A DNA stretch of 51,827 bases from Obrimoposthia wandeli (taxonomy: Eukaryota), in assembly GCA_977020255.1 (NCBI GenBank), contig CDROCS010001208.1, positions 1 to 51,827 on the forward strand. Direction: 5' to 3'. How positions within the stretch are numbered: position 1 is the first letter of the stretch; the number at the start of each line of letters is the position of its first letter. Below are positions 2,866 through 51,827 of this stretch, piece after piece. The notes beneath the pieces are model-generated. The model was not told the DNA's origin. It searched no databases and saw only the letters and a program-made list of their open reading frames with translations. The translations under genes were made by a program, and so were the position numbers.

Positions 2866-4008
2866 AATTGTAACCCCGGTATGGAAGATTATTGATGGAA
2901 TGTTGACTGAATTTTAATGATTTAATAAATTCTTATGTAATTTACATATTTTATATCAGATTTTTATAAGAATTATTTGTGAGGTATTAAAGATCAAACA
3001 CACGCTCACACACGTATTAATATAAATATGATGTAACATTATTTTAAAAATACAAAATACATACATTTAAAATTATCATTGGAGTCAAAGACAATAAATA
3101 TTAAATAAAGAAGAAAACTCATAAAATAACTAAAATTTATTTTAAAAACAAAAGTCTAAAGAGGACTGATGATGCATTCTCATGTAGATCCATCTACTTC
3201 CAACTTGGGTGTGGAAGGATATTAAGGGTTTCATCACTCAGAAGCAGAGAAATCGGGTTGTTCTCTAGGCTCCAGTGCTTCTTTCTTGAAGGGCTTGATC
3301 AGTTCTATTTTTCTTCCAGTGAACAGGCATATAAATATAGCAAACTAACATTGTGTCTCTTATTGATTCCAATTTAAAATAATGACAAGAAATGAAAGAA
3401 TGATTTCTTATATAATCTTCTTGAACAATTTAATTGGTTTAACATCTGCACATGTATTGACATTTAGTTACGTAAGATACAAGCTTTGTATATGAAAAGT
3501 CAAGGTTCATACTAAAATGTATTCATTTAATGAAATAATTTCAACATTAAATATGTTGTTAATTATTATTTAGATAATAGTTTAATAACTTTAAAATTAA
3601 TACTATAAGAATATTACTGCAACTGTATATTAACTACTATTTACTATATACATTAATTTTGATTTAACAAGTAATAGATTTAATTCATATTCACAACTGC
3701 GTAAAAATAATCTAGTTTATAATTATTTGACTAATTGTAAATTTCTATGTTAAAGTTTATTTCTAAAAATATTATTTTGAATGTTAAAATTTTCTTTTTA
3801 AAAATTTCAATGTAAATTATTATTCTGAAAATTTATAAGTTAAAACTTTCTTTATAAAAAAGTTTAAAAATATTTCTTTCAAAATTTTAATTGTTTCAAA
3901 AAATAAAAAATAAATAAAAAAAAATCGCAAAAATTTAAAGATTAAAAAAAAAATGTCGAAAATTTTGATAATTAAAACAAAAATTCGAATAGTAAAACAA
4001 AATTGTGA

Positions 4009-4134
4009 CACGTGGCGTGGTTGCCATGGCAACACCAACGACGTAACACATATACACTTATGATGCAACACACACACGGTCATGTCGCAATGCACACATA
4101 CTTATGACGTAATACACATTTGTTTATGACGTAA
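4009..4134. promoter_or_regulatory. Transcription-factor site cluster near the candidate Polinton terminus
   Basis: CACGTG at 4009-4014, perfect palindrome GTTGCCATGGCAAC at 4020-4033, and TGACGTAA at 4105-4112 and 4127-4134. Confidence 0.5.
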
Positions 4135-5390
4135 TACACACATACATATGTATACATGTTATTACATCATACACACCTTCACTTATGCTGGCACCCCCCT
4201 TCTCTCAAATGCCACATCACCCTACTCTCTTTGTTTGCAATGTGTTTGGAAGTAGCTTAATATTGGTTACCCTATGACGCTTAGTAACTAATTTTTAATA
4301 TTAGATTTCTGTCTAATTTGTAAATATATTATAAACGTAATAACACGGCACAATTCATATTTTGGTGATTAAATATTACAATAAAATTCTAGTACAGAAC
4401 TTTCAAATATGCTAATCAAAACATTCCAGCATGTTTAGATTTTTGTCAAAAGGAAAATATTTATTTTTAAATTATTCTCCATATATTACGCAATACATGC
4501 ATGAAGTTACTATAAATTATACAATATGTAAAGGAACATACTAATTTAAATGCAACATTTCATTTTTATGACGATAATTTATCGATTTTCGAATTTCTAT
4601 TTTTGTTTAAAATCTCTATGTGGTAGAAGAATTTTAAGTGTAAATATGAAATCAGAGTAATCAATGGATTTATTAATAAACAAATAAATTTAAAATGTAT
4701 CCAAAAAAATTATGAGCATCTTTGAAGAACATTTTATACGTTTCCATCGAGATATTACTGGAATGGAATGACGCTATAAAGAGCAATGGAATTGAAATAT
4801 GATGGCTGATTACTGCTTGAGTTTAAATTTTAAAAAGTCTCAACCAAATTGCAACAGACAATCAAAAATTAAATCTTTTACTAATTAAAATTTTGAAACA
4901 TATAGTATTTTTGAGAAAAGTGGATAGGATACAGATTAAAGGGTGATTTTGTTGGAATCAATATAAAAATTTATCCAGACTCATGATTATAAAAAATCAG
5001 AAAGAAATTTATATTTTGTTGTCCAGTGTTATTATTTATTTGCTGCACAAGAAATGTTTCTAAATGTAATATTCAGTAAGTGAAGTATGGGGACATCTTA
5101 TTTGTTAACAGTATAATATCAAGTGGAAAATGTGACAATGGTCTTCATTGTAGCTGTATTGGATACATCAATTTATCAAGCCGTATATGAACCGAAAGTA
5201 AAGAAAGGGATTTGGTATCTATTGAAGTTAGAGATGAAAGTGAGTAATGTTGTATTAATTGTTTAGTTTTTCTTCAAAATAACTTGTAATTTCATTTTAA
5301 GTTTTTATATATTAATATTTCTCCGATCCGCCTTTTCGGTGGTGTATAGTTTTATTTGCATTGTTTTTGGTGACCCTCTAAATGTTGTAG

Positions 5391-5540
5391 GGTGATGACG
5401 GTTGGTTCTATATCGACAACCAACTTGTGATTAAACTTTCAAATATGAAAATGGACCTTCCGCATGGTGGATTCGTGGGTATCGGGACTGACAAATACGG
5501 GTATGCAATGTTCAAGGACTTCGCTGTCAACGGTGAATGA
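5391..5540 (+). pseudogene. Orphan terminal exon resembling the galactocerebrosidase (GH59) C-terminus
   Basis: TGTAG acceptor, then GDDGWFYIDNQLVIKLSNMKMDLPHGGFVGIGTDKYGYAMFKDFAVNGE*, similar to the GALC tail GWAAIGT..FAQFDNF. No upstream exons recognised. Confidence 0.5.
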
Positions 5541-6005
5541 ATCACTACTCATTACATCGACATAGTTTGTATTTCTCAAGGTTTTTATTTGTTTGAAATG
5601 TAATTAAGAAGTATTTTGATATCCCGTGATGGTACAAAGAAATTTAATGCACATTAACTGATTTGGATGAGCATGTTATCGAAATATAGTTTTTTGTTAT
5701 AACTCTTTTTAAATATCATTTGCTAATTTAACACTCAGAAAAAAACACACAAATCAAAAAATTTAAGCTGCATTATATGGTTTTTATATTTTTAAATGCG
5801 TTACAATTGGTATTATACAATGTTTTTGTTTCTGTTTTAATATGCATAACAGAGATGCAACCAGCTGGTACTGGCCGATAAATTACTCCTTTTTTTAAAT
5901 ATTCAATTTCTTTTAGTAGTATTTGAAAAAATAGTTTAGATTTTTATTTGAAAAAATCATTTTATTGAAGCATTAACAATATGTTATTTTACTTACGTTA
6001 TTTCC

Positions 6006-7345
6006 TCTTCGTATCCGGTATATAGCCCTTTTGGCACATTTTATCATGATCTCAAAGACCTCTCCAAAATGTGGTACATGTGGTGGGTTGAAGACCCAAC
6101 GTATCTCCTCCTTTACTAACTCCTTTTGAATCTGATAACCGTCCCGTATCAATTCGCTCACTTCATTCACCGCCCCTACAAAATTTGTGCCATTATCCGA
6201 GATTATCATTTGTGGTCTCCCTCTTCTTCCTAAAAATTATTTTAATGCCCTAATAAACCCATCGATATCCAAACCATAAGCCATCTCTAAATGAATGGCC
6301 TGCGTTTGTAAGTATGTAAAAGGCAAAGGTATATCTTAGTCCTCACTATTCCACGTCCTTCCTTTGTGATGAATGGTCCTGCAAAATCCACTCCGACGTT
6401 TGCAAAGGCCCTTAACGGTATTTCGAATCTGAATGCCGGCAAGGAAGCCATCTCTTTGACCATCCCTGCGACTTTACCTTTATTGCAGTCGAAGCATTCT
6501 CGCTCTATTTCTTTGATTACTCTTTGTACTTTAGGAATCCAATATTTATTTTGGCTCTCATTCGGTATATTCTGTACTCTGGCGTAATGCCGTAACCTCT
6601 CGTGTGTATCCTTTATGATTAATCTAGTCAGCCAACTCTTTTCTGATAACAAAATGAGATATTTTGTGTCATTATCTAAAAACTCCGCATTCATAATTTG
6701 GGTATTGGCTCTGATTATTTCTATTTCATCAACCCACGGTTTCAACTTTAGTAATGAGCTTGTTATCTCAATCTCTTTCTTCTTTATTAACCGTTGGTAT
6801 TCCTTGCAGAAATACTGAATTTGTTCATGCTTTATCAACAACTGCATCCCTTTTTCCACTTCATCCATTTTCAGCTCGCCTACAAGTCTGCGATTTTGAG
6901 GTAACTTTATATTTCGTGCAAATCTTAGTATCCCAGCTAAGACTCTCTTCAATCTCGTTAAGTCGGAATAAGTCTCTATTTTCAATCTTCCTGTATGAAC
7001 ATTGTTACTTCCTTGTACCGTTTCTTTTTCTTTTAATCTGACTGTATTTCTTCTAAGTCTAAATTATCAATCGCATCGTCACTTTGCCTGCGTATTCATT
7101 ACGCATGTATACTACTGCGCCATACCTTAAAGTTATCTGCGTTTACTTGGGTTACGATTTGAGCCATTAACGGCGAAGCATTTATTCCAAAGACTACTTT
7201 CTGAAATCCATACATATCCCTCAGGTTCTCTCTATTTTTCCCTAAAAACCTTAGCCATGGGCGGTCTTCCTTACATACCTTCATATGTAAATACATCTTT
7301 GAAATGTCACACACTAACGCTATTACATTCCTTCAAATTCCCTAA
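6006..7345 (-). mobile_element. BEL/Pao LTR-retrotransposon pol fragment (RT piece plus integrase), truncated at 6006
   Basis: CDISKMYLHM..DRPWLRFL..VFGINASP (BEL RT), then THERLRH..CFDC, VGVDFAGPF, SDNGTNFVGA, and PHFGEVFE. Confidence 0.88.
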
Positions 7346-7863
7346 CAGAGAGACCCAAGCACTACATAGGAACTAAAAAGAAATAAAATTTGTTTTTGGA
7401 AATTAAATTCAATAATTTTACTGGACATCCTCCTACGAAGAATACTACAGATAATTATTTTTATTTTTGTGTTAGGTTCATGTATTCATGTGTTAAAATA
7501 TTGAAGTTTTAATTTATGTAACTCTCAGAATATTTAGCCCCCTGGTCATTTTTATTTGTATGTATTAAAATTAAATTACAATTTTTGTATTTAATAGAGC
7601 CCAACATATACTAGAGATATGAAATTAATTGATAATAAAATATTTCATTTTATAGAATATAATTAGATTAAAAATATTGGATATGCTTCTTTGTACTTTC
7701 TTCATTTAAAAAATGTGCGTGTTTAATATCTTTATATTCAAAGTCATTTAAGTTTACTTTTACTTCGAACTACAGACTTGATTAATTTATTCACTTTTTA
7801 TCTTACTGATTCTTTTTCTTGATCTCTTATGCTTTACTTTTTCTTTGCATTTACGTTTTACTA

Positions 7864-8510
7864 TCAACTTCTTAAAATGCAATGCAAATTATTTTTTTCT
7901 TTTTGTTTATAAACAGTTACTCCCTTAGAATTAAATATATATGTTAAAACACGTAAATCATATAAGCAGGCTTGTGTAAATTCAATAAATATATATCCAT
8001 GTGCTTGTTTATCAGCATCATGGAATGAATGAACTAGAAAGTTTTTATTTTGGGTAAAAGCTTGTCTGGCCACGAAATCTACAACTGTTTGATCTCTCGA
8101 ATTTTTAAATAATACTAAGTAATGTATATTAAAATATCTTGATCTATGATGACATCCTTGATGAAAAAGATTTTGAGTGATAAATATATCTGTTACTTCA
8201 CGATGTCTTGCAATCTTTGTAAATAAATTATTAAAGTTCGATTCCTTGTTAGCTTCTTGATACTAATCATCAATAATTAATATATTTTATTTCTTCAATC
8301 TTTCGCACAAGTCGTATCAAATCCTTCAATAAATATTATTACCTTCAACTTGCAAACTTCTGTTTGGTCTATCCCACTTTCCCCTCTTCCACCATGATAC
8401 TAAAAAAATATTTTTAAAACTGGAATTGAAAATAGTTTCATTTTGTAACAATTTCCTGGGATCCACTTTCCACTGGGATCAACTATTTGAAATACGGTAT
8501 TTTTATTCAT
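7864..8510 (-). pseudogene. Second Polinton A32-like ATPase remnant
   Basis: MNKNTVFQIVDPSG (degenerate Walker A), LIIDD*YQEANKESNFNNLFTKIARHREVTDIFITQNLFHQG, YLVLFKNSRDQ, and AHGYIFIEFTQ. Confidence 0.82.
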
Positions 8511-8559
8511 CTTCTTTACATCTAGACTTTCATATAACAATTTATTTTCAATATTCGAT

Positions 8560-9040
8560 TCAACAGCGTATTGATAATCCAAATTTATCAATCTCAAAAT
8601 CATAAGTTTCCCACTGAAAAATATATTTACACATAGCGGTGTAAACGTCAAATATCTGAGTGCAGGAAACTTTTCAGGTTCAAACATGCATCGTTCTTTC
8701 ATTTTCTCTGTAATTTTATAAAGATTTATTGGTTTCCCAAGATTTTATGAAACTATGATTGATTGTTTGGCGCCGATTTGAATTCCAAAGAGTAAATTGA
8801 TCTAATTCAATGGTGTTTTGCATCCCATAACACGACAACTTCCTAAAAAATTCAATATGAAAATAAAATAAAAACTAACTTGAGGGAAGCAAACCAACTG
8901 TTTCGATACTGAGAAGACCCACTCTTCTCAACGAGACATTAAACAATGAGGAAGTATAATATACTGGTATATACGGATTGGCATAAAATGATTCTTCATA
9001 ACTTGTTAAGCTTATATTGCTCCAAATACTTTTTAGTATT
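8560..9040 (-). pseudogene. Second TBP-like remnant with a 37-nt intron (8843-8879)
   Basis: TVG(L/I)(L/F)PS, intron, SCRVMGCK, QSIIVS, NLGKPINLYK, and MFEPEKFPALRYLTFTPLCVNIFFSGKLMILRL. In-frame stops are present. Confidence 0.65.
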
Positions 9041-9205
9041 CAGAAACGAAAAACTAAATTCATTTCAATAAAATTCTTTCAACAATTGAGGATATTTATA
9101 AATTTATTTTCAACCAATACATTATTACAAAAAAATATTTAGATACAATTGAATTTTCTGAACAGATAATACATAATTTTAATACAAAATTTATCAAATC
9201 ATAGA

Positions 9206-10075
9206 ATGGATTCATGTATCATTTGTACTGGAGAGCTAGAGGATGATGAAGTTTGTGTGACTGAGTGCAGACACTATTTCCACACCGAGTGTCTCAAGGT
9301 ATGGATGCTAGTCAACTGTAGCTGTCCATTTGAACGAAATGAATTGCAGTACATCTTCATTTGTCAAAATGGCACTGAGAGCCGAGTTAGAGTGGCCACA
9401 CTTCTGCGGAAAGAATGGGAAGGATTGTGCAGAGAGATTGTGGAGGATACGAAAGCGAAGTGTTCGGTCTTGTATGAGGTGCTGACGACCCAGATGGTGC
9501 TGACCCATGAATTTCTAGAATTAGCTGCACAACAACGGGATCACGGACCGACACTGGAAAAGTGGTTCCATTGTCTTTCGTATTTGTGCAACACTATGCA
9601 AAGCTTCGAGGATGAGTTCACAGAAAACTTCATCAAGGTCCTGGAAACAGAACAGAACTCAGAAGGCTCTGACAGTCTGGAGTCGTCTTTGAATTGCATG
9701 AAAGATGTGCAAGAACAGCTGTTATCTCTTGTACACATCTGCAGCGTGTTAGGAGCCATAGGTGGCGATTTGGACCGGGTCCGATCTTTGTGTCAAGATT
9801 TAGAACTACTGGTCGACATCACACGGGAAGGTGTACTCGATCTCAAGATCTACTTCCTCACGACGAAGCTGCCAACTCAGCTGAGAGGTAACATGAAAAT
9901 AGTGCTTTTTGGAATAGCTTCAATGCAGCATTGTGCCATGTGCCGAGAAGAAATCGTTGATGTTGAGCGACTCCACGAGAGCCCCAAGACCTTAGGTATT
10001 TGTGGTCACAGGATCTGTCACAACTGTACCCTAGAATTACACGAGTTGGACATATTTTGTCCACATGAAAATTGA
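9206..10075 (+). CDS. Intronless 289-aa double-RING protein, putative E3 ubiquitin ligase (copy 1)
   Basis: N-terminal RING-H2-like set C4/C7/C21/H23/H26/C29/C40/E43, C-terminal RING-HC-like set C243/C246/C266/H268/C271/C274/C285/E288, and an acidic, probably helical middle. ATG-to-TGA intact, with AATAAA at 10113-10118. Confidence 0.85.
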   Translation: MDSCIICTGELEDDEVCVTECRHYFHTECLKVWMLVNCSCPFERNELQYIFICQNGTESRVRVATLLRKEWEGLCREIVEDTKAKCSVLYEVLTTQMVLTHEFLELAAQQRDHGPTLEKWFHCLSYLCNTMQSFEDEFTENFIKVLETEQNSEGSDSLESSLNCMKDVQEQLLSLVHICSVLGAIGGDLDRVRSLCQDLELLVDITREGVLDLKIYFLTTKLPTQLRGNMKIVLFGIASMQHCAMCREEIVDVERLHESPKTLGICGHRICHNCTLELHELDIFCPHEN

Positions 10076-10266
10076 ATTCTTTTGACAAGTACCAAAAAGG
10101 CTTTGTTTTTTTAATAAATTTAGTAATCTTTCTAAAATTACTTTTAATATTATTAAATTGAACAAAGGCAGTTATTTATTTTAATATAACATTATAAATA
10201 ACATGCTTTTAATTTTTTTATTAACAATATATTTAACAATATTTACACTTCAAACCTTTAACTAAC

Positions 10267-10393
10267 CATGTAGTACAGTTGGCGTCCACAAAATGTAAGA
10301 ATACAGGTTGATTTAATCCACTCAATGATGCTGGAGGGGATTTGAGTGTTTTATTTTACACTGCAATAAAAGCCGTTACAATATTTGTTCTAT
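10267..10393 (-). pseudogene. Orphan 127-nt exon resembling the GAIN/GPS region of an adhesion GPCR (other copies at 23254-23380 +, 29147-29273 -, 42147-42273 +)
   Basis: TTTCAG acceptor and GTTAGT donor. Encodes RTNIVTAFIAV*NKTLKSPPASLSGLNQPVFLHFVDANCTT(W), with one in-frame TAA. Confidence 0.45.
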
Positions 10394-10829
10394 CTGAAAT
10401 ACAAATGAATAAAACATTAGGAAAGTGAGAACTTACTAACTATTCATTTTTTATATTTAATACTTGATATATATTTAATGTTAAAAATAAACTATCTTAT
10501 TTAAACTTTTTAGATTTTTTTATTAAATTTTAAATCTAGTGAGGATACAAGTTAAGGGTTATGGAATACTGGCGGGTAATTTTAATACTTTTACCATTTT
10601 TTAATTAATTTTTATTATATTTGAATTTTTATTATTGAAATATTAATTAACTAAATTTTAATTAATTAAAATTTTATAATACATATCCGTTTAATAATAT
10701 AATTTTATTTAAATACACAAATTAATATATTTTATATTTTTACTAAAAATAATGTTAAATAATCAAACATTACCGATAAAACTTTTTCTAAAGTGGGAAA
10801 ATAATGAAAAATTATAAAAACCTAAATAT

Positions 10830-11015
10830 AAATAGAGAATAAGATTGGATCAAGTAACGAACACCGGGCAAACACTGCATTTTAAGTATTCAGGGTCTGA
10901 AACAGTATCATCAAATTTTAACAGATAGTTTCCGCTAAATAAAATCCCTTTTAAACCAATTAAGCTCTCCACAATTCAAATGCGGCAGATAGATCAAAAA
11001 GTATTATTAGTACTC
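10830..11015 (-). mobile_element. Non-LTR retrotransposon (CR1/L2-like) RT fragment (other copies at about 22630-22815, 29725-29895, 41525-41710)
   Basis: ILFDLSAAF and SLLDPILFSIY, matching LDLSAAFD and GSVLGPxLFxxY. Confidence 0.6.
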
Positions 11016-11283
11016 ATTTTTCATAGTTTAAATATTTTAATACATTTTATACTAAACAATGCCATTTTAGTTCAATGATAACTTCTATAAGCTGTTTGGC
11101 AAATACATAAACACATTCTTTTTTAAGTAAATGATGAATGGTGTCAGAACTTATTTTTCAAGAACTTTCAATAGACATTAAAAGTTTAAATTGTATTTAC
11201 AAATTGATAGATTGGCTTTGTGCGCACACCAAAACATAATACCGAAAATGATTGCATAATCCCGCAAGGATGACCTGTCACAC

Positions 11284-11599
11284 CACAAGGGTATGGCTAA
11301 GATAGGTTATGAAACTTTGAAGGTATGATTGTGACCTTATATAGTTGACCAACACACTTAGAGGGTTATGGACGTCTATAGATGAAAACCCAGGTTCAGT
11401 TATAACTTGAAGATTTAGAGATAAAGCTGAGGTCAACTATGGTTGGCCATCACATCTAAAGGATTGTGGTCGTCCGTAAATGAAGTGGTCGGACTAAAGG
11501 CCAAATCAAGTTTCAAATATGAAGGTTTGAGTATATGGTTGGGATAATCTTCATCCTTCCACCTACTAAAAGAGACAATAGAAATAACAAATTGCACAC
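11284..11599. repeat. Degenerate, internally repetitive dispersed element (mirror at about 40942-41257), related to 16900-17030
   Basis: Recurrent TATGGTTGGCCA, ATAGATGAAA and TTATAACTTGA motifs shared with the reverse complement of 16900-17030. Confidence 0.5.
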
Positions 11600-12074
11600 T
11601 ATTAGCATTACAAAGACGATTAACTTTATATCAAACGTCTCGATGGTTTCACTTATTTCTGTCAGTGAATGAGATGTCAATTCCAGTCAACTATAATAGT
11701 AAATAAAAACATGTCTGTTATCAGTAAATACCAAATATTTATTGAAGGTGACTACTGAATTTTTGTCGTTTTTTTCTTAGTTTAAAACTTTAACGAAATA
11801 TAGAAATCAATACCATAAATAACTAAAATATAAAGAATTTGTTACATACATCATTTTTCTGTTATTTTAATAACTTAGCAGTGCATATAACGTCTTTGAA
11901 ATGACTTTTTCCACATATCATCTTGGTTTTTTTGGAACAGTGTATACAATGGTGCAGCCTTTTGACAGGTAATGCATAAAAAAGATTAAAATTCTAGGTA
12001 GTGTACTAAAAAAATTTAAATTGCAAAAGTTATAACTTAATCTTAAAAAATACCAAAAACCGTAATATCTAATC

Positions 12075-12620
12075 TAGCTTCATCTCAGACCCTCTTCAAG
12101 TTCTGGCAGGTAGATGCTGTTGGCAGAGGGATAGCAGTGTCCCAAGCCCTGGCCAAATTTTACCTGGTGCTTAATGGAGCCGGTTCTGTCTCCTGCAGAC
12201 ATCGTTGACTGTGAGGCGGACTAATCTCGATTGGAGAGACTGGTATCCTCTCGAACAAAATTGGCCCGTAGTCCACTGGAAATGGGAGAATCTCCTGATG
12301 ACCTGATGGCCTTCCTCTTCCACGAAGCTTTCTTCAGTTTCTCCTTCTCATGCTGAAGCTGACGTGAGACCGCATCCTGCTGCCCTCGCGAATCTGGAAG
12401 CATTGTCGGTTCCGGATTCTCCAGTTCTGCAGGCAATTCGTCCAATCCAGCTTCATCCCAGTCCATGATCAATCACTGCTTCTCTAGAATTGAACATTGC
12501 GGTGATACACTTTTGGAGCGCTTCGTTTTCTGCACATCTGCTCGCTTTACCCGTTTCCGCGAGAAAGGAGAAATTTATCGCCAAGTCTCCTCAGTTACCT
12601 TTGAAGGACCATGCAATAAA
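12075..12620 (-). pseudogene. GC-rich decayed ORF of unknown family (mirror at about 39920-40465 +)
   Basis: Sharp compositional island with partial frames, for example MDWDEAGLDELPAELENPEP..HEKEKLKKASWKRK. Several stops and frameshifts. Confidence 0.3.
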
Positions 12621-13499
12621 GAATTGTTAAATATTATAAAATATTTAGATAAAAAATATTATTAAATATATTAAAATTTTCCTCAATAATAGGATAAGGA
12701 AGTTTATTTTAATGTTCCATTAATGTCTCCGTAGAATGTAGAATATTGGTTTTCGACTTTCTAATGCGTTTGGTCTCTCTTCTATGAGTGTTGCAGGTTA
12801 CTGCAAAAGAACATCAATAACATTTGACATGTATAGATTTTTTTCACTCCACACACATGCACGGTATTAAATGACAGTGGTAGCCCTCCGGCGATAGGAG
12901 GATGGCGTGAATTAGACCGGACATATCCACCTACTCATGAGCAGACATATAATATCTATGAAATTATTGTGCTTTCAATTGAAGGTCACATAAGCATAGA
13001 TTATCATAAGTAGACAAGTGTAGACAATTTATCGTATAAGACACTGAAAGAGCTTTAAATCATAAGCCACTAACAACTTTATTGATTTAAATTCAACTTT
13101 AAAAAATACTCCAATAATTATAATCATAATTATTTAGGCATATCACCAGGATTTCAAACTCATAATCCATGGAATGGATTATTATAATTCTATAACAAAA
13201 ATAATAATAAACTTATCATTATTACCACTACACATTATCATCCCACCATCACCCACCATCACCACTATCATCATCACAATTACCACATATTTTGGTCTCA
13301 TTAAAAAATCAATACAACCAATCCTTACTTTCATTATTTAGCATTGGCCAAGTTAGGTGTGCATAACCATTAAATTTACCAAATCAATAAAACCAAGGCT
13401 TACTTTTATTATTCAACATTGGCCAAGTTTATATTTGTGAGTACCTTATTTCCGTGTCATTTAATTTTCGTGAGACATAAATAATAAGTTGATTATCTT

Positions 13500-15759: not shown

Positions 15760-15813
15760 CTGCCGTCCCCCCGACGAGCCGGCAGGGCGAAACCGGTTAA
15801 GCCGGTCAGGGAC
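15760..15813 (+). ncRNA. Type I hammerhead ribozyme-like motif with a U4C core variant
   Basis: Stem I GTCCC(C)/(A)GGGAC; core CCGACGA; stem II GCC-GGCAG-GGC; GAAA; stem III ACCGG-TTAAG-CCGGT; GTC cleavage triplet at 15805-15807. The 5' tail CTGCC is complementary to loop II GGCAG. Confidence 0.68.
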
Positions 15814-25090: not shown

Positions 25091-25113
25091 ATGAAAGTCT
25101 ATATGTAAAGAAG

Positions 25114-42464: not shown

Positions 42465-43333
42465 TCAATTTTCATGTGGACAAAATATGTCCAACTCGTG
42501 TAATTCTAGGGTACAGTTGTGACAGATCCTGTGACCACAAATACCTAAGGTCTTGGGGCTCTCGTGGAGTCGCTCAACATCAACGATTTCTTCTCGGCAC
42601 ATGGCACAATGCTGCATTGAAGCTATTCCAAAAAGCACTATTTTCATGTTACCTCTCAGCTGAGTTGGCAGCTTCGTCGTGAGGAAGTAGATCTTGAGAT
42701 CGAGTACACCTTCCCGTGTGATGTCGACCAGTAGTTCTAAATCTTGACACAAAGATCGGACCCGGTCCAAATCGCTACCTATGGCTCCTAACACGCTGCA
42801 GATGTGTACAAGAGATAACAGCTGTTCTTGCACATCTTTCATGCAATTCAAAGACGACTCCAGACTGTCAGAGCCTTCTGAGTTCTGTTCTGTTTCCAGG
42901 ACCTTGATGAAGTTTTCTGTGAACTCATCCTCGAAGCTTTGCATAGTGTTGCACAAATACGAAAGACAATGGAACCACTTTTCCAGTGTCGGTCCGTGAT
43001 CCCGTTGTTGTGCAGCTAATTCTAGAAATTCATGGGTCAGCACCATCTGGGTCGTCAGCACCTCATACAAGACCGAACACTTCGCTTTCGTATCCTCCAC
43101 AATCTCTCTGCACAATCCTTCCCATTCTTTCCGCAGAAGTGTGGCCACTCTAACTCGGTCTCAGTGCCATTTTGACAAATGAAGATGTACTGCAATTCAT
43201 TTCGTTCAAATGGACAGCTACAGTTGACTAGCATCCATACCTTGAGACACTCGGTGTGGAAATAGTGTCTGCACTCAGTCACACAAACTTCATCATCCTC
43301 TAGCTCTCCAGTACAAATGATACATGAATCCAT
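42465..43333 (-). pseudogene. Double-RING protein (copy 4), frameshifted
   Basis: A 1-nt deletion near 43158 (AACTCGGTCTCAG vs AACTCGGCTCTCAG) splits it into 92-aa and 227-aa ORFs. It also has G187S. A sequencing error cannot be excluded. Confidence 0.75.
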
Positions 43334-43496
43334 TCTATGATTTGATAAATTTTGTATTAAAATTATGTATTATCTGTTCAGAAAATTCAATTGTATCTAA
43401 ATATTTTTTGTAATAATGTATTGGTTGAAAATAAATTTATAAATATCCTCAATTGTTGAAAGAATTTTATTGAAATGAATTTAGTTTTTCGTTTCT

Positions 43497-43977
43497 GAAT
43501 ACTAAAAAGTATTTGGAGCAATATAAGCTTAACAAGTTATGAAGAATCATTTTATGCCAATCCGTATATACCAGTATATTATACTTCCTCATTGTTTAAT
43601 GTCTCGTTGAGAAGAGTGGGTCTTCTCAGTATCGAAACAGTTGGTTTGCTTCCCTCAAGTTAGTTTTTATTTTATTTTCATATTGAATTTTTAGGAAGTT
43701 GTCGTGTTATGGGATGCAAAAACACCATTGAATTAGATCAATTTACTCTTTGAATTCAAATCGGCGCCAAACAATCAATCATAGTTTCATAAAATCTTGG
43801 GAAACCAATAAATCTTTATAAAATTACAGAGAAAATGAAAGAACGATGCATGTTTGAACCTGAAAAGTTTCCTGCACTCAGATATTTGACGTTTACACCG
43901 CTATGTGTAAATATATTTTTCAGTGGGAAACTTATGATTTTGAGATTGATAAATTTGGATTATCAATACGCTGTTGA
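43497..43977 (+). pseudogene. TBP-like remnant, mirror copy (intron 43659-43694, 36 nt)
   Basis: Reverse complement of 8560-9040. Confidence 0.65.
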
Positions 43978-44026
43978 ATCGAATATTGAAAATAAATTGT
44001 TATATGAAAGTCTAGATGTAAAGAAG

Positions 44027-44673
44027 ATGAATAAAAATACCGTATTTCAAATAGTTGATCCCAGTGGAAAGTGGATCCCAGGAAATTGTTACAAAATGAA
44101 ACTATTTTCAATTCCAGTTTTAAAAATATTTTTTTAGTATCATGGTGGAAGAGGGGAAAGTGGGATAGACCAAACAGAAGTTTGCAAGTTGAAGGTAATA
44201 ATATTTATTGAAGGATTTGATACGACTTGTGCGAAAGATTGAAGAAATAAAATATATTAATTATTGATGATTAGTATCAAGAAGCTAACAAGGAATCGAA
44301 CTTTAATAATTTATTTACAAAGATTGCAAGACATCGTGAAGTAACAGATATATTTATCACTCAAAATCTTTTTCATCAAGGATGTCATCATAGATCAAGA
44401 TATTTTAATATACATTACTTAGTATTATTTAAAAATTCGAGAGATCAAACAGTTGTAGATTTCGTGGCCAGACAAGCTTTTACCCAAAATAAAAACTTTC
44501 TAGTTCATTCATTCCATGATGCTGATAAACAAGCACATGGATAAATATTTATTGAATTTACACAAGCCTGCTTATATGATTTACGTGTTTTAACATATAT
44601 ATTTAATTCTAAGGGAGTAACTGTTTATAAACAAAAAGAAAAAAATAATTTGCATTGCATTTTAAGAAGTTGA
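44027..44673 (+). pseudogene. Polinton ATPase remnant, mirror copy
   Basis: Reverse complement of 7864-8510. Confidence 0.8.
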
Positions 44674-45189
44674 TAGTAAAACGTAAATGCAAAGAAAAAG
44701 TAAAGCATAAGAGATCAAGAAAAAGAATCAGTAAGATAAAAAGTGAATAAATTAATCAAGTCTGTAGTTCGAAGTAAAAGTAAACTTAAATGACTTTGAA
44801 TATAAAGATATTAAACACGCACATTTTTTAAATGAAGAAAGTACAAAGAAGCATATCCAATATTTTTAATCTAATTATATTCTATAAAATGAAATATTTT
44901 ATTATCAATTAATTTCATATCTCTAGTATATGTTGGGCTCTATTAAATACAAAAATTGTAATTTAATTTTAATACATACAAATAAAAATGACCAGGGGGC
45001 TAAATATTCTGAGAGTTACATAAATTAAAACTTCAATATTTTAACACATGAATACATGAACCTAACACAAAAATAAAAATAATTATCTGTAGTATTCTTC
45101 GTAGGAGGATGTCCAGTAAAATTATTGAATTTAATTTCCAAAAACAAATTTTATTTCTTTTTAGTTCCTATGTAGTGCTTGGGTCTCTC

Positions 45190-46890
45190 TGTTGGGGAAT
45201 TTGAAGGAATGTAATAGCGTTAGTGTGTGACATTTCAAAGATGTATTTACATATGAAGGTATGTAAGGAAGACCGCCCATGGCTAAGGTTTTTAGGGAAA
45301 AATAGAGAGAACCTGAGGGATATGTATGGATTTCAGAAAGTAGTCTTTGGAATAAATGCTTCGCCGTCAATGGCTCAAATCGTAACCCAAGTAAACGCAG
45401 ATAACTTTAAGGTATGGCGCAGTAGTATACATGCGTAATGAATACGCAGGCAAAGTGACGATGCGATTGATAATTTAGACTTAGAAGAAATACAGTCAGA
45501 TTAAGAGAAAAAGAAACGGTACAAGGAAGTAACAATGTTCATACAGGAAGATTGAAAATAGAGACTTATTCCGACTTAACGAGATTGAAGAGAGTCTTAG
45601 CTGGGATACTAAGATTTGCACGAAATATAAAGTTACCTGAAAATCGCAGACTTGTAGGCGAGCTGAAAATGGATGAAGTGGAAAAAGGGATGCAGTTGTT
45701 GATAAAGCATGAACAAATTCAGTATTTCTGCAAGGAATACCAACGGTTAATAAAGAAGAAAGAGATTGAGATAACAAGCTCATTACTAAAGTTGAAACCG
45801 TGGGTTGATGAAATAGAAATAATCAGAGCCAATACCCAAATTATGAATGCGGAGTTTTTAGATAATGACACAAAATATCTCATTTTGTTATCAGAAAAGA
45901 GTTGGCTGACTAGATTAATCATAAAAGATACACACGAGAGGTTACGGCATTACGCCAGAGTACAGAATATACCGAATGAGAGCCAAAATAAATATTGGAT
46001 TCCTAAAGTACAAAGAGTAATCAAAGAAATAGAGCGAGAATGCTTCGACTGCAATAAAGGTAAAGTCGCAGGGATGGTCAAAGAGATGGCTTCCTTGCCG
46101 GCATTCAGATTCGAAATACCGTTAAGGGCCTTTGCAAACGTCGGAGTGGATTTTGCAGGACCATTCATCACAAAGGAAGGACGTGGAATAGTGAGGACTA
46201 AGATATACCTTTGCCTTTTACATACTTACAAACGCAGGCCATTCATTTAGAGATGGCTTATGGTTTGGATATCGATGGGTTTATTAGGGCATTAAAATAA
46301 TTTTTAGGAAGAAGAGGGAGACCACAAATGCTAATCTCGGATAATGGCACAAATTTTGTAGGGGCGGTGAATGAAGTGAGCGAATTGATACGGGACGGTT
46401 ATCAGATTCAAAAGGAGTTAGTAAAGGAGGAGATACGTTGGGTTTTCAACCCACCACATGTATCACATTTTGGAGGGGTCTTTGAGATCATGATAAAATG
46501 TGCCAAAAGGACTATATACCGGATACGAAGAAGAACCGAAGTGACTGACGAAGAATTACAATCAGAATTCATCAAAGCTGAAAGCCTTGTAAATTTTAGG
46601 CCCATTGGAGTTAAGAGCATAGATGCAAAGGAAAATGAGGCGCTTACACCCAGCCATTTTTTAATAAATCAGGCGTATGCCTAGACAACGTTTGGGAGTG
46701 ATGAAATAAAGTCGAAGCACAGATGAAAATTTGTCCAAATGTTAACCAGTATGCTATGGAAGCGATGGATGGAGGAGATTGTACCCATGTGGACACCGAG
46801 ACAAAAGTGGCATGAGGCACGCACACCGTCACTGATCGATGACATCGTGTGGATAATAGAGAAACAAGGGGAGAAAGGTAAAGATTAGGG
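45190..46890 (+). mobile_element. BEL/Pao pol fragment including the integrase C-terminus
   Basis: Mirror of 6006-7345, continuing as VTDEELQSEFIKAESLVNFRP..ALTPSHFL..LWKRWMEEIVP (DUF5641-like). Confidence 0.88.
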
Positions 46891-47280
46891 TGAGAAATAA
46901 GTTAATAGTTAGAGCGCTACATAGTGTGTGTAAATTAGTTTGGGTCTTTTGAACTGTTTTATAATTTGATCATTGTTATCATTATGTCAATGCTGAATAA
47001 TGAAAGTAAGCATGTGATTAGATGATAATGATGAGTTAAGAGTCTGAGGAATATTTATATGAATTTGAATTTAATAGTTAAAATGGTAATTTAATAGATT
47101 AGAGTAGATTGGATTGTGTCTTTTAAGTTGTTTACATTTCTCATTGTTATCATTATGTCAATACTGAATAATAAAAGTAAGCATGTGATTGGATGATAAT
47201 GATTAGTAAAGAGTAGGAGGAACAAGAGTAAGTGAAATAGAATATAATTAAGTCGTAGATTGATCTAGTCTGATCAAATG

Positions 47281-47293
47281 GGGGAGAATGTTG
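47281..47293 (+). other. Candidate polypurine tract and 3' LTR start (GGGGAGAA-TGTTG) of the BEL/Pao element
   Basis: Purine run followed by TGTT about 400 bp downstream of the integrase end. The LTR end was not identified. Confidence 0.4.
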
Positions 47294-47888
47294 ATTAATT
47301 TATATAAAAATCAATAAAAGTATATTTTTAAATACAATTAATAAAACGAGAATGGAAAATTATTGGATTATGCTACTGAGTATCCAAAAAAAACAGAAAG
47401 AAGATAGAAGGCTTATGTTTTTTTATATCTATTTTGCTATTTAAATAAAGAGATGTTGAAAATGCCTTATATAATAATGAAGGCTTATGTTATATTATAT
47501 CCATTTGTCTATTCAAATAAAGAGATGTTGAAAATGCCGTTTAGTTATTTGATATATATTTGACATATATAATGAAAGAAGGGGGGAAATGATTAATTTA
47601 TATAAAAATCAATAAAAGTATATTTTTAAATACCATTAATAAAACGAGAAAGGAAAATTATTGGATTATGCTACTGAGTATCCAAAAAAAACAGAAAGAA
47701 GATAGAAGGCTTATGTTTTTTTATATCCATTTTGCTATTTAAATAAAGAGATGTTGAAAATGCCTTATATAATAATGAAGGCTTATGTTATATTATATCC
47801 ATTTGTCTATTCAAATAAAGAGATGTTGAAAATGCCGTTTAGTTATTTGATATATATTTGACATATATAATGAAAGAAGGGGGGAAAT
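47293..47888 (+). repeat. Two tandem copies of a 298-bp unit, each with an internal subrepeat pair
   Basis: 47293-47590 is nearly identical to 47591-47888. The subrepeat is GAAGGCTTATGTT..AAATAAAGAGATGTTGAAAATGCC. Confidence 0.9.
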
Positions 47889-49821
47889 ATATTTGAAGTA
47901 AATGAAAATATGCTTGTTAGAAAGGACCCAATGAAAAGAAATAAGAATAGTGATCAGTATGAAGTTTCATTTAGAATAATATAATTGTTGAGTCCACGAC
48001 AAGTATCAATTCAGTTTCCAATAGGAATCCTGGACAGGAGAATCGAATGAGTGAAAAAATGCAAGTTGGAATAAAGAAGGGGAGAGTAATGTAATCATAA
48101 ACAAAGAATAATCTACTGGTACTAATTTGTTTTACGGATTCGTATTTAAACCTGTATTAATATAAATTATATTGTGGAATCAAACTTTTAAATTATATCT
48201 ACAATAAAAATGAATGACAATATATTGATATATATATTTGGTTGGTTTGCGTAATATCAACTGACTTTCTATCGCTTTCAATATGTTTTCAACATTATTT
48301 CATCACCAACTTTTGTTTGCGTTAGTAATTCAGCATATTGTCGAAATTTTTGCTGTATTTAAGACGCACAGTGAATTTATTTTGTATAATTTAAAATATT
48401 TTAATGTATCCACATTGCAGTATTTTTATCAAATTCTCCATCAGTTTTATGCTTACTAACTCTACATCCGTAATCCAGTGTAAAAAGCTATTACAATGTC
48501 AGCTAAGAGTCTAATAATTTATCATTTGTTTGTTGCAGTATTCAGAAACTCGTTAATCTCATCTTTTATAAAAATATAGATTTTTCACACAACCTCCTTT
48601 AAATTATTTTCTATTATAGTTCATCTAGGAAACATTTGTAGTTTGAAGCCGTAAATAAGTGGAATTTTACAATTATATGATGAAGTAAATGAATCTGAAT
48701 GTGCTGGACACATTACTGTCAAATGATTAGAGTGATAAAAAAAGGTATAAGTTATTCTGTAGATTTTAAATTTATTGTTATATTTTCACAAAATATTTCC
48801 ATTAGAAATCATTATTTTGTACTTTTAAAGGAATTGATTGACAACATAATATCTTCAGTACTACGTTTCATTTTTATCAAATTTATAAAACTAAATTCAA
48901 ATAACTATAGTAACTCATTAAATTTAAATTAGATAGTAAATTGATTGCGAATAATAGTTTTTATACTCTACATACAAAACGTTCATGTAAAAAGAATTTT
49001 TCCATACTTGTATATATATTAATCCTTGTTTGTTTTGCTCACCCGCAATAGTATATATCATATGGAAAAGTATTAATCTATCAATTTCAGGAAAATAAGA
49101 ATTCCTCCATGTTTGTAGATTTCTTTCCTAAAATTAGGCAGTGTTTTTCATATCGAGCATAGTATGAATGAAAATATATTTTGCGTTACGTGTGTATATA
49201 GGAGTTATATTTATCGTATTTTTCTGTTTATATAACACAGAATTTATTTTAAGATTATTATGTAATCAACTTAATCAAAAATATGATATTTATGTTTAGC
49301 TTAAATTTAACTTTTAAATATTTTCCATAAATTACAAAAAATAAACTAAGGATAATTGAATAAATTATGTTAAGTAAAATAACATATTGTTAATGCTTCA
49401 ATAAAATGATTTTTTCAAATAAAAATCTAAACTATTTTTTCAAATACTACTAAAAGAAATTGAATATTTAAAAAAAGGAGTAATTTATCGGCCAGTACCA
49501 GCTGGTTGCATCTCTGTTATGCATATTAAAACAGAAACAAAAACCAATAATAATAATAATACCAATTGTAACGCATTTAAAAATATAAAAAACCATATAA
49601 TGCAGCTTGTGAGTTACATTTTTCTGAGTGTTAAATTAGCAAATGATATTTAAAAAGAGTTATAACAAAAAACTATATTTCGATAACATGCTCATCCAAA
49701 TCAGTTAATGTGCATTAAATTTCTTTGTACCATCACGGGATATCAAAATACTTCTTAATTACATTTCAAACAAATAAAAACCTTGAGAAATACAAACTAT
49801 GTCGATGTAATGAGTAGTGAT

Positions 49822-49975
49822 TCATTCACCGTTGACAGCGAAGTCCTTGAACATTGCATACCCGTATTTGTCTGTCCCGATACCCACGAATCCACCATGC
49901 GGAAGGTCCATTTGCATATTTGAAAGTTTAATCACAAGTTGGTTGTCGATATAGAACCAACCGTCATCAATTCAC
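49822..49975 (-). pseudogene. Mirror copy of the GALC-like terminal exon
   Basis: Reverse complement of 5391-5540, with a 4-nt length difference just after the acceptor. Confidence 0.5.
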
Positions 49976-51144
49976 CTACAACATTTAGAGGGTCACCAAA
50001 AACAATGCAAATAAAACTATACACCACCCTGAAAAAGGCGGATCGAGAAATATTAATATATAAAAACTTAAAATGAAATTACAAGTTATTTTGAAGAAAA
50101 ACTAAACAATTAATACAACATTACTCTACTTTCATCTCTAACTTCAATTGATACCAAATCCTCTTTCTTTTACTTTCGGTTCATATACGGCTTGATAAAT
50201 TGATGTATCCAAATACAGCTACAATGAAATAATCATTGTCACATTTTCCACTTGATATTATACTGTTAACAAACAAGATGTCCCCATACTTCACTTACTG
50301 AATATTACATTTAGAAACATTTCTTGTGCAGCAAATAAATAATAACACTGGACAACAAAATATAAATTTCTTTCTGATTTTTATAATCATGAGTCTGGAT
50401 AAATTTTTATATTGATTCCAACAAAATCACCCTTTAATCTGTATCCTATCCACTTTTCTCAAAAATACTATATGTTTCAAAATTTTAATTAGTAAAGATT
50501 TAATTTTTGATTGTCTGTTGCAATTTGGTTGAGACTTTTTAAAAATTTAAAACTCGCAGTAATCAGCCATCATATTTCAATTCCATGTGTACTCTTTATA
50601 GCGTCATTCCATTCCAGTAATATCTCGATGGAAACGTATAAAATGTTCTTCAAAGATGCTCATAATTTTTTTGTATACATTTTAAATTTATTGGTTTATT
50701 AATACATCCATTGATGACTCTGATTTCATATTTACACTTAAAATTCTTCTACCACATAGAGATTTTAAACAAAAATAGAAATTCGAAAATCGATAAATTA
50801 TCGTCATAAAAATGAAATGTTGCATTTAAATTAGTATGTTCCTTTACATATTGTATAATTTATAGTAACTTCATGCATGTATTGCGTAATATATGGAGAA
50901 TAATTTAAAAATAAATATTTTCCTTTTGACAAAAATCTAAACATGCTGGAATGTTTTGATTAGCATATTTGAAAGTTCTGTACTAGAATTTTATTGTAAT
51001 ATTTAATCACCAAAATATGAATTGTGCCGTGTTATTACGTTTATAATATATTTACAAATTAGACAGAAATCTAATATTAAAAATTAGTTACTAAGCGTCA
51101 TAGGGTAACCAATATTAAGCTACTTCCAAACACATTGCAAACAA

Positions 51145-51827
51145 AGAGAGTAGGGGGATGTGGCATTTGAGAGAAGGGGGGTGCCAGCACAAGTGAAGGT
51201 GTGTATGATGTAATAACATGCATACATATATATGCGTGTATTACGTCATAAACAGATATGTATTACGTCATAAGTATGTGTGCATTGCGACATGACCGTG
51301 TGTGTGTTGCATCATAAGTGTATATGTGTTACGTCGTTGGTGTTGCCATGGCAACCACGCCACGTGTCACAATTTTGTTTTACTATTCGAATTTTTGTTT
51401 TAATTATCAAAATTTTCGAAATTTTTTTTTTAATCTTTAAATTTTTGCGATTTTTTTTTTTTTTTTTTTTTTTTGAAACAATTAAAATTTTGAAAGAAAT
51501 ATTTTTAAACTTTTTTATAAAGAAAGTTTTAACTTATAAATTTTCAGAATAATAATTTACATTGAAATTTTTAAAAAGAAAATTTTAACATTCAAAATAA
51601 TATTTTTAGAAATAAACTTTAACATAGAAATTTACAATTAGTCAAATAATTATAAACTAGATTATTTTTACGCAGTTGTGAATATGAATTAAATCTATTA
51701 CTTGTTAAATCAAAATTAATGTATATAGTAAATAGTAGTTAATATACAGTTGCAGTAATATTCTTATAGTATTAATTTTAAAGTTATTAAACTATTATCT
51801 AAATAATAATTAACAACATATTTAATG
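51145..51827 (+). mobile_element. Mirror copy of the candidate Polinton terminus (AGAGAGTAGGG..) with the X-box (51342-51355) and E-box (51361-51366)
   Basis: Reverse complement of 3545-4230. Confidence 0.55.

What the first reader, a model, noticed from the sequence alone, without database searches (positions are those of the whole stretch)
3545..51827. Giant palindrome of at least 48 kb with a 2.65-kb spacer
Seen: arms of at least 21 kb, highly similar but not identical. Differences include scattered SNPs (3 in 870 bp between the inner RING copies, visibly denser at 3.5-6 kb), different (TA)n lengths, a 1-nt frameshift and a 2.8-kb indel. Known: large palindromes arise by fold-back or breakage-fusion-bridge repair and are maintained by arm-to-arm gene conversion in ampliconic regions such as mammalian sex chromosomes. 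Inference: a real, fairly recent inverted segmental duplication, with divergence apparently rising away from the centre.
Basis: partly seen in the sequence, partly recalled or inferred. Interest (0 to 1): 0.75.

Follow-up and report, generated by a model that had tools for sequence, protein, structure and literature searches.

The report
Nested inverted duplication in transposon-rich DNA
The 48-kb palindrome is really in the sequence, but it is a two-age inverted duplication of decayed mobile-element DNA (virus-like Maverick and retrotransposon fragments plus one orphan RING gene), an ordinary kind of structural rearrangement whose physical reality still needs read-level proof.

Summary
Left arm 3545-24944 (21,400 bp) mirrors right arm 27598-51827 (24,230 bp) around a 2,653-bp spacer, and the right arm runs to the window end, so the outer boundary is unseen. 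The claimed outward rise in divergence is not there. Substitutions are about 0.22% and evenly spread over the inner 18.7 kb, then step to 1.56% outside about 6210. The 2.8-kb indel and most small indels lie in that older outer block. The spacer is not all unique: its first 1,346 bp are the tail of an older ~4.1-4.4-kb inverted repeat (R, ~1.7-2.2% diverged) present twice per arm. R is a decayed Maverick/Polinton fragment (TBP-like gene and frameshifted A32-type packaging ATPase) plus a 289-aa orphan RING ORF, intact in three of four copies. The rest is retrotransposon debris. The inner junction (27597|27598) is blunt, with no microhomology. Best reading: a real, young inverted duplication made by fold-back or template switching, with its outer junction hidden in older inverted homology. 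Rivals are an old palindrome partly homogenised by gene conversion, and an assembly mis-join. The organism is unidentified: an AT-rich eukaryote, not human-like. Ordinary kind, modest interest.

The parts
3545..24944 (+). Left arm of the palindrome, 21,400 bp. Its left limit is set by the window, not by the repeat.
27598..51827 (-). Right arm, 24,230 bp, the reverse complement of the left arm. It runs to the last base of the window.
24945..26290 (-). First half of the spacer. It is the tail of repeat copy R2 and matches R1 7333-8680, so it is not unique sequence.
26291..27597 (.). Unique half of the spacer (U), 1,307 bp. It holds a 91-codon open frame (27243-27515, minus strand) with no family match.
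27597..27598 (.). Inner junction between the spacer and the inverted copy. It is blunt, with 0 bp of inverted microhomology. Its partner position 24944 lies about six codons into the TBP-like ORF of R2.
   Evidence: Sequence read; ORF.
3545..6210 (+). Older outer block of the left arm, 1.56% substitutions and 16 small indels. The change point is at about 6210 (support 6100-6360).
46327..51827 (-). Older outer block of the right arm, the mirror of 3545-6210, including the extra 2.8 kb.
46536..49370 (+). 2,835 bp present only in the right arm. It continues the retrotransposon integrase reading frame and holds a 298-bp tandem duplication at 47292-47888.
5995..6001 (.). 7-bp filler in the left arm in place of the 2.8 kb, the mark of a deletion with filler DNA.
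7333..11763 (+). R1, the outer left copy of the older repeat. It carries a 311-bp extra piece at 11284-11594.
22199..26290 (-). R2, the inner left copy, full length.
27598..30327 (+). R3, the inner right copy, cut off at the palindrome junction (equivalent to R1 position 8680).
40777..45204 (-). R4, the outer right copy.
9206..10075 (+). RING ORF of 289 aa in R1, intact, 46-47% G+C. It has an N-terminal RING-H2 domain and a C-terminal Cys/His-rich stretch.
23587..24456 (-). RING ORF in R2, intact.
28086..28955 (+). RING ORF in R3, intact.
42465..43333 (-). RING ORF in R4, broken by a 1-nt gap in codon 59.
7900..8843 (-). Maverick/Polinton-type gene block in R1: a 94-aa gene remnant, a TBP-like ORF and an A32-type packaging ATPase whose pieces lie in different frames. 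Mirror copies are at 24931-25723 (R2) and 43844-44637 (R4).
5976..7332 (-). Retrotransposon fragment holding integrase and a piece of reverse transcriptase, cut at the R1 boundary. Its mirror is at 45205-46684 and beyond.
20193..21093 (-). Reverse transcriptase and RNase H fragment of an LTR retrotransposon (mirror at 31438-32326). A further piece lies at 13554-13841 (mirror at 38699-38986).

Best explanation
This is a real, nested inverted segmental duplication in transposon-rich DNA of an AT-rich eukaryote.

Older layer (about 1.6-2.2% substitutions). The ~4.1-4.4-kb repeat R already stood as an inverted pair, R1 and R2, about 10.4 kb apart. An inverted pair of retrotransposon-derived sequence, the outer blocks, probably also already existed.

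Younger layer (about 0.2%). A replication or repair accident copied the stretch from about 6.2 kb to 24,944 in reverse orientation. One junction is the blunt, non-homologous join at 27597|27598. It leaves 24945-27597 as a single-copy spacer, as in a fold-back loop. The other junction left no scar because it lies in the older inverted homology at about 6.1-6.4 kb (about 46.2-46.4 kb on the right). This is the logic of a two-template-switch rearrangement: one homology-driven junction in an inverted repeat and one end-joined junction.

Shown: the anatomy, the two ages, the order of events and the blunt junction. Inferred: the mechanism and the prior existence of the outer inverted pair.

The structure has no demonstrated function. 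Its consequences are four copies of an orphan RING ORF (three intact) and a locus prone to hairpin formation and spacer inversion.

The confidence given is for a real two-age inverted duplication. The specific two-junction mechanism alone I would put at about 0.4.
For: Arms and spacer are shown.

The four-way alignment of R has 46 sites where R1 = R4 and R2 = R3 differ. There are no sites where R1 = R2 differ from R3 = R4, or where R1 = R3 differ from R2 = R4. This gives ((R1,R4),(R2,R3)), so the R pair predates the arm duplication.

The inner 18.7 kb has uniform, Poisson-like divergence of 0.22%, as expected for a single event.

There is a sharp step to 1.56% at about 6210, statistically like the R1/R2 divergence of 1.7-2.2%. 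The 2.8-kb deletion with filler and 16 of the 42 small indels fall on the older side.

The junction has 0 bp of microhomology.

The 2,653-bp spacer sits inside the range published for fold-back inverted duplications: 766-70,466 bp, median 3,428 (PMC3907307). Blunt or insertion junctions paired with a junction inside inverted repeats are documented for DUP-TRP/INV-DUP (PMC11293582).

The breakpoint cuts an ORF inside R, so it is not a mobile-element terminus.
Against: No reads are available, so physical existence is unproven.

The outer end lies beyond the window, so the proposed homology-driven junction is inferred only from a step in divergence.

Most published fold-back junctions show 2-8 bp of microhomology (13 of 21). 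This one shows none.

The same step could arise from gene conversion stopped by the 2.8-kb heterology, or from uneven heterozygosity between two haplotypes.

The innermost 2.6 kb (R2 against R3) is somewhat more diverged, at 0.51%. A single-age model explains this only by chance, multi-base events or exchange among R copies.
Confidence: 0.55

Rival explanations
1. An old palindrome of about 1.6-2% age, whose inner 18.7 kb has been kept nearly identical by arm-to-arm gene conversion. The 2.8-kb deletion in one arm acts as a heterology barrier that left the outer part unconverted.
For: The step in divergence lies only 100-360 bp inside the 2.8-kb indel. The outer divergence equals that of the older R pair. 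Arm-to-arm conversion is well documented in large palindromes (papers listed).
Against: The inner region shows no patchiness. Substitution events are Poisson-like and no unconverted islands at about 1.6% are seen. The R1/R2 pair, only 10 kb apart in the same locus, has not been homogenised. Among the 13 R2/R3 differences, one singleton at R1 position 8890 sits between fixed old differences at 8889 and 8892, which argues against a conversion tract there.
Confidence: 0.18
2. An assembly artefact: two haplotypes of one heterozygous locus joined head to head, or a contig built on a fold-back chimeric read.
For: Arm differences of 0.2-1.6%, including a 2.8-kb indel, are in the range of heterozygosity. 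16 of 28 one-base indels are in homopolymers, as in long-read error. The palindrome reaches the very end of the window. No independent assembly of this organism was found to cross-check.
Against: There is no N gap at the join, so this is not a scaffolding join. The join connects unique spacer sequence to the middle of a repeat with no shared sequence, so an overlap graph could not make it without reads that carry it. Fold-back read chimeras give identical arms, not a deletion with filler, 14-15-bp indels and a 7-fold step in divergence.
Confidence: 0.2
3. Two insertions of one very large composite mobile element in opposite orientation, or the terminal inverted repeats of a giant element.
For: R carries Maverick/Polinton genes, and such elements have terminal inverted repeats. 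R1-B-R2 spans 18,958 bp, a Maverick-like size.
Against: The arm's inner end cuts the TBP-like ORF and is not an element terminus. In the related contig L001 the TBP-ATPase block is internal, not terminal. No polymerase, Maverick integrase or capsid genes were found in the window. All element genes seen are frameshifted fragments mixed with retrotransposon debris, so nothing here could move on its own.
Confidence: 0.03

Closest known systems
Fold-back inverted duplications with a single-copy spacer (Hermetz et al. 2014, PMC3907307)
   Same: Both have an inverted copy joined to the original through a short single-copy spacer. The 2,653 bp here falls within the published 766-70,466 bp (median 3,428).
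   Different: Most published junctions have 2-8 bp of inverted microhomology or a shared repeat, whereas this one is blunt. The published cases sit next to terminal deletions. Here the far end is unseen, and an internal, homology-mediated resolution is proposed.
DUP-TRP/INV-DUP rearrangements mediated by inverted low-copy repeats (PMC11293582, PMC4352052)
   Same: One junction lies inside pre-existing inverted homology and leaves a hybrid repeat. The other is an end-joined or microhomology junction, and blunt junctions are recorded.
   Different: No triplicated segment is visible in the window. The pre-existing inverted pair is inferred from a step in divergence and was not observed in an unrearranged reference.
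Large sex-chromosome palindromes of mammals (P1-P8 of the human Y, X-linked palindromes)
   Same: Arms over 10 kb, more than 99% identity over most of the arm, a spacer of a few kb and a multicopy gene in the arms.
   Different: There is no evidence of gene conversion, sex linkage or germline expression. The content is decayed mobile elements. The arms are far less similar than the roughly 99.97% typical of the Y palindromes (that figure is from memory).
Maverick/Polinton virus-like elements
   Same: R carries a 94-aa gene, a TBP-like gene and an A32-type packaging ATPase in the same order as a metagenomic Maverick contig that also has an rve integrase and a protein-primed polymerase (L001).
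   Different: Only a decayed internal fragment is present, with no polymerase, integrase, capsid genes or termini. A RING ORF sits where L001 has a MATH/TRAF-like gene.

Membership tests
Large palindromic segmental duplication (ampliconic type) | Inverted arms longer than about 10 kb around a spacer | tested here: met
   Arms are at least 21.4 and 24.2 kb, with a 2,653-bp spacer.
Large palindromic segmental duplication (ampliconic type) | Arm identity above 99% along the arms | tested here: inconclusive
   The inner 18.9 kb is 99.5% identical with gaps and 99.78% by substitutions. The outer 2.4 kb is only 97.3%.
Large palindromic segmental duplication (ampliconic type) | Ongoing arm-to-arm gene conversion | tested here: inconclusive
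   Divergence is uniform and Poisson-like, and no conversion tracts were detected. Population or outgroup data are needed.
Large palindromic segmental duplication (ampliconic type) | Host gene family in the arms with germline expression, and sex-chromosome location | not testable with these tools
   Only an orphan RING ORF sits in the arms (four copies, three intact). No expression or chromosome data are available.
Fold-back inverted duplication | Single-copy spacer of about 0.7-70 kb between direct and inverted copies | tested here: met
   The spacer is 2,653 bp, within the published range.
Fold-back inverted duplication | Short inverted microhomology or a shared repeat at the junction of spacer and inverted copy | tested here: not met
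   There is 0 bp at 27597|27598 against 24944|24945.
Fold-back inverted duplication | Adjacent terminal deletion, telomere healing or translocation at the far end | not testable with these tools
   The right arm runs off the window at 51827.
DUP-TRP/INV-DUP-type two-template-switch rearrangement | One junction inside a pre-existing inverted repeat pair, giving a hybrid repeat | tested here: inconclusive
   The step from 0.22% to 1.56% at about 6210 is consistent with a hybrid. No unrearranged reference is available.
DUP-TRP/INV-DUP-type two-template-switch rearrangement | Second junction blunt, with microhomology or with a small insertion | tested here: met
   The junction is blunt. Published junction types are listed.
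DUP-TRP/INV-DUP-type two-template-switch rearrangement | An inverted triplicated segment flanked by duplications | tested here: not met
   Only two copies of arm sequence occur in the window. A third copy beyond the window cannot be excluded.
Maverick/Polinton element (for repeat R) | A32/FtsK-type packaging ATPase | tested here: met
   172 relatives at up to 75% identity carry PF04665. The pieces here lie in different frames in every copy.
Maverick/Polinton element (for repeat R) | Protein-primed family B polymerase, rve integrase and capsid genes | tested here: not met
   tblastn with the L001 and L002 proteins found none of these in the window at E of 1e-3 or better.
Maverick/Polinton element (for repeat R) | Terminal inverted repeats with target-site duplication | tested here: not met
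   The ends of R (7333 and 26290) abut unrelated sequence with no shared flanking duplication. The gene block is internal in L001.

The most novel reading that the evidence does not exclude
If transcribed through, the palindrome would fold into a hairpin RNA tens of kb long, made of Maverick and retrotransposon fragments. It could then act as a small-RNA source that silences those elements. From memory, this resembles the maize Mu killer inverted duplication and the hairpin-RNA loci of flies. A second reading is that the GC-rich, better-conserved RING ORF is a captured E3 ligase gene being amplified by nested inverted duplication.
Probability: 0.07. Interest if true: 0.6.

Novelty: new member of a known kind. 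Interest (0 to 1): 0.3.

Why it matters
If real, this is a clean, base-resolved natural example of how inverted duplications build on one another. An older inverted repeat pair sits inside a younger 20-kb inverted duplication. One junction is blunt and the other is apparently hidden in older inverted homology. That architecture has mostly been reconstructed from human patients and yeast assays.

The case also shows that a step in arm divergence can be mistaken for a gradient. In practice, the locus is a likely trouble spot for assembly and for variant calling, and it should be checked with reads before the palindrome is used in any evolutionary argument.

Tried and rejected
Organism and independent copies:
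- Exact-protein look-ups of the three intact RING ORFs and of a 140-aa ORF found nothing.
- A 26-mer shared by all four R copies found nothing in the metagenome or viral contig collections.
- So neither the organism nor an independent assembly could be identified.

RING ORF:
- The word search found no relatives.
- The full search of 1.84 billion representatives matched only the first ~50-150 residues, mostly just the ~50-residue RING domain.
- The AlphaFold model without an alignment was poor (mean pLDDT 39.6), so no fold search was run.
- The ORF showed no similarity to the MATH gene or to other proteins of the related Maverick contigs.

Other scans:
- No tRNA genes and no Rfam families were found.
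- Pfam found nothing for the GC-rich islands, the spacer ORF or several other open frames.
- The PDB sequence search did not recognise the ATPase piece.

Ideas rejected:
- A smooth divergence gradient.
- Microhomology at the inner junction.
- Inverted remnants inside the spacer that would mark a once-symmetrical centre. Only chance-level short matches were found.
- Flanking direct repeats for the 2.8-kb indel. None were found; there is a 7-bp filler instead.
- R as the terminal inverted repeat of a Maverick.
- Fold-back mediated by R1/R2 annealing. That would give A-R1-B-R2-A' and would not duplicate B, so it does not fit the observed order.

Frameshifted genes were searched as separate pieces.
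Full report
**Observation**

The window has no N and is about 30% G+C. Self-BLAST on the minus strand gives two collinear blocks. Block 3545-5995 matches 51827-49371 at 97.3%, and block 6002-24944 matches 46535-27598 at 99.5%.

The palindrome therefore has a left arm of 21,400 bp, a right arm of 24,230 bp and a spacer of 2,653 bp (24945-27597). The right arm ends at the last base of the window. Coordinate 3545 is thus a window limit, and the true outer boundary is not visible.

A global alignment of the arms has 86 substitutions (40 transitions, 46 transversions) and 43 indel events. One of these is 2.8 kb long.
- three substitutions between the inner RING copies;
- (TA)n length differences;
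- a 1-nt gap that splits the outer right RING copy in codon 59;
- the 2.8-kb indel;
- denser differences at 3.5-6 kb.

**Divergence along the arms**

Divergence does not rise steadily away from the centre. By segment, substitutions are:

| Segment | Substitutions |
|---|---|
| 3545-5994 | 1.44% |
| 5995-7332 | 1.05% |
| 7333-11283 | 0.13% |
| 11284-22362 | 0.17% |
| 22363-24944 | 0.51% |

A single change point at about 6210 (support 6100-6360) separates 1.56% outside from 0.22% inside. This model improves the likelihood by 2dLL = 69, against 22 for a linear gradient.

Within the inner 18.7 kb the slope with distance from the centre is not significant and is slightly negative. Substitution events there are spread as a Poisson process (dispersion index 1.3, p = 0.18). 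The arms therefore consist of a young, uniform inner part and an older outer part.

**The 2.8-kb indel**

The indel lies on the older side of the step. In the right arm, the extra 2,835 bp (46536-49370) continue the reading frame of a retrotransposon integrase. In the left arm they are replaced by a 7-bp filler, and there are no flanking direct repeats. This is the mark of a deletion repaired by end joining, not of an assembly slip.

**An older inverted repeat inside each arm**

Each arm holds two copies, in opposite orientation, of a ~4.1-4.4-kb repeat that I call R:
- R1, 7333-11763;
- R2, 22199-26290;
- R3, 27598-30327, cut off at the palindrome junction;
- R4, 40777-45204.

In the four-way alignment, 46 sites show R1 = R4 differing from R2 = R3. 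No site shows either of the other two groupings. In the part that R3 lacks, 29 of 1,336 sites separate R1 and R4 from R2.

The tree is therefore ((R1,R4),(R2,R3)). R was already an inverted pair about 10.4 kb apart, diverged by about 1.7-2.2%, when the whole arm was duplicated.

It follows that the first 1,346 bp of the spacer are the tail of R2. Only 26291-27597 is unique. The divergence of the R pair is statistically like that of the outer blocks (1.56%).

**What the sequence encodes**

R carries a block of virus-like Maverick/Polinton genes:
- One open frame has a TBP domain (Pfam PF00352, E = 3e-7). Its best solved relatives are archaeal TATA-binding proteins (E = 1e-6).
- The next frame matches 172 proteins of about 210 aa at up to 75% identity, most of which carry PF04665, the poxvirus A32 packaging ATPase.

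One relative sits on a 28-kb ENA contig (L001). That contig has the order MATH gene, 94-aa gene, TBP gene, A32 ATPase, rve integrase and protein-primed polymerase, and it lies next to an LTR retrotransposon.

tblastn with that contig's proteins finds the 94-aa, TBP and ATPase genes in the same order in R1, R2 and R4. The ATPase pieces lie in different frames in every copy. A fifth copy, diverged to 69% nucleotide identity, lies at 110-2800 outside the visible palindrome.

No polymerase, Maverick integrase or capsid gene is present in the window. R is therefore a decayed internal fragment, not an element with termini.

The rest of the arms holds fragments of LTR-type retrotransposons:
- an integrase zinc-binding domain and a reverse transcriptase piece at 5976-7332;
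- reverse transcriptase at 20193-21114;
- a further piece at 13554-13841.

From memory, the motifs in the 5976-7332 fragment look like BEL/Pao elements, which would point to an animal host. This is a lead, not a tested result.

I do not take the window for human sequence, given its virus-like and retrotransposon content and its 30% G+C.

**The RING ORF**

The only intact gene-like feature is a 289-aa ORF in R, present four times and intact in R1, R2 and R3. Pfam sees an N-terminal RING-H2 finger (E = 2.5e-10). The C-terminus has a second Cys/His-rich stretch that looks like a RING by eye; Pfam reports no match there.

Neither the word search nor the full search of 1.84 billion representatives found anything beyond roughly the first 50-150 residues, in most cases just the ~50-residue RING domain.

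The ORF is 46-47% G+C against a 30% background. It carries fewer old differences than the rest of R, 6 in 870 bp against 40 in about 1,855 bp. Across the four copies there are five amino-acid changes and five silent changes.

This hints at constraint, but the numbers are small. A structure prediction without an alignment failed (pLDDT 39.6).

**The junction and the mechanism**

The inner junction is sharp. Position 27598 pairs with 24944. The next bases outward (27597 and 24945) do not pair, so there is no inverted microhomology. Position 24944 lies about six codons into the TBP-like ORF, so it is not a mobile-element end.

A single-copy spacer of 2.65 kb is typical of fold-back inverted duplications. 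The published range is 766-70,466 bp with a median of 3,428. However, 13 of 21 published junctions had 2-8 bp of microhomology (PMC3907307).

Fold-back driven by annealing of R1 with R2 would give A-R1-B-R2-A' without duplicating B, and this does not match the observed order.

The model that fits all the observations has two junctions:
1. A broken or stalled replication end switches strand and copies the region between about 6.2 kb and 24,944 in reverse.
2. One junction is the blunt join at 27597|27598.
3. The other lies in older inverted homology at about 6.1-6.4 kb, where it leaves only a change in divergence.

This is the logic described for DUP-TRP/INV-DUP rearrangements. There, one junction lies in inverted low-copy repeats and the other is end-joined, including blunt cases (PMC11293582). 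No triplication is seen in this window.

The anatomy, the order of events and the blunt junction are shown. The mechanism and the prior existence of the outer inverted pair are inferred.

**Rivals**

1. *Old palindrome with gene conversion.* The inner part would have been homogenised by arm-to-arm gene conversion, with the 2.8-kb heterology as a barrier. The step lies next to the indel, which fits. Against this, the inner divergence is uniform rather than patchy, and the nearby R1/R2 pair has stayed diverged.
2. *Assembly artefact.* This cannot be excluded without reads. Against it, the join has no N and no shared sequence, so an assembler would need reads that carry it. A fold-back read chimera would also give identical arms, not a deletion with filler, 14-15-bp indels and a 7-fold step in divergence.
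3. *Paired insertions or terminal repeats of a giant element.* This is contradicted by the position of the breakpoint and by the decayed, internal nature of the element genes.

**Verdict**

The palindrome is in the sequence as described, and it is most likely a real, fairly recent inverted duplication. It is nested on older inverted repeats, it has a step and not a gradient in divergence, half of its spacer is repeat, and its content is mobile-element debris plus one orphan RING ORF.

This is a new example of a known kind of rearrangement. The analogy with sex-chromosome amplicons is one of shape only.

No independent copy of this genome could be found for a cross-check. The decisive test remains spanning reads and depth.

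Noticed in passing
window 110-2800 (minus strand): A fifth, more diverged copy (about 69% nucleotide identity) of the Maverick-type block lies outside the visible palindrome. It has the 131-aa, 94-aa, TBP-like, A32 ATPase and 107-aa genes in the same order as contig L001. The ATPase pieces lie in different frames. No RING ORF sits between the 94-aa and 131-aa genes.
   Followed up: partly
window 9206-10075, 23587-24456, 28086-28955 and 42465-43333: The orphan 289-aa RING ORF is 46-47% G+C against a 30% background. It has fewer old differences than the rest of R. In 1.84 billion representative proteins it has no relatives beyond roughly its first 50-150 residues, mostly just the RING domain. 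It occupies the position where the related contig L001 has a MATH/TRAF-like gene.
   Followed up: partly
window 47292-47888: A 298-bp tandem duplication (2.0 copies, 98-99% identical) lies inside the 2.8-kb segment found only in the right arm.
   Followed up: no
window 11284-11594 (and its mirror in R4): A 311-bp piece is present in R1 and R4 but absent from R2 and R3. It is bounded by the 5-bp repeat CACAC. It is either a small insertion with a target duplication or a microhomology deletion in the other lineage.
   Followed up: no
window 12100-12600 and 15400-15900 (mirrors at 40000-40500 and 36700-37100): Two islands of about 52% G+C carry long open frames on both strands. They have no Pfam or Rfam match, and their nature is unknown.
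   Followed up: partly
window 27243-27515 (minus strand): A 91-codon open frame, acidic and without a start codon at its beginning, lies in the unique half of the spacer. At 45-46% G+C it is richer than its surroundings, and it has no family match. It could be an exon or a pseudogene lying about 80 bp inside the palindrome junction.
   Followed up: partly
window 16046-16387 (mirror at 36152-36493): There is a weak match (27% over 124 aa, E = 4e-5) to the 335-aa protein encoded next to the polymerase gene on Maverick contig L001. It is a stray element fragment, out of order relative to R.
   Followed up: no
window 22363-24944 against 27598-30163: The innermost R copies differ by 0.51%, about three times the rate of the rest of the inner arm. 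The differences include clusters of adjacent changes at 23172-23174 and 23227-23228 and a 15-bp indel at 23503. Whether this is chance, complex mutation or exchange among R copies is not resolved.
   Followed up: partly
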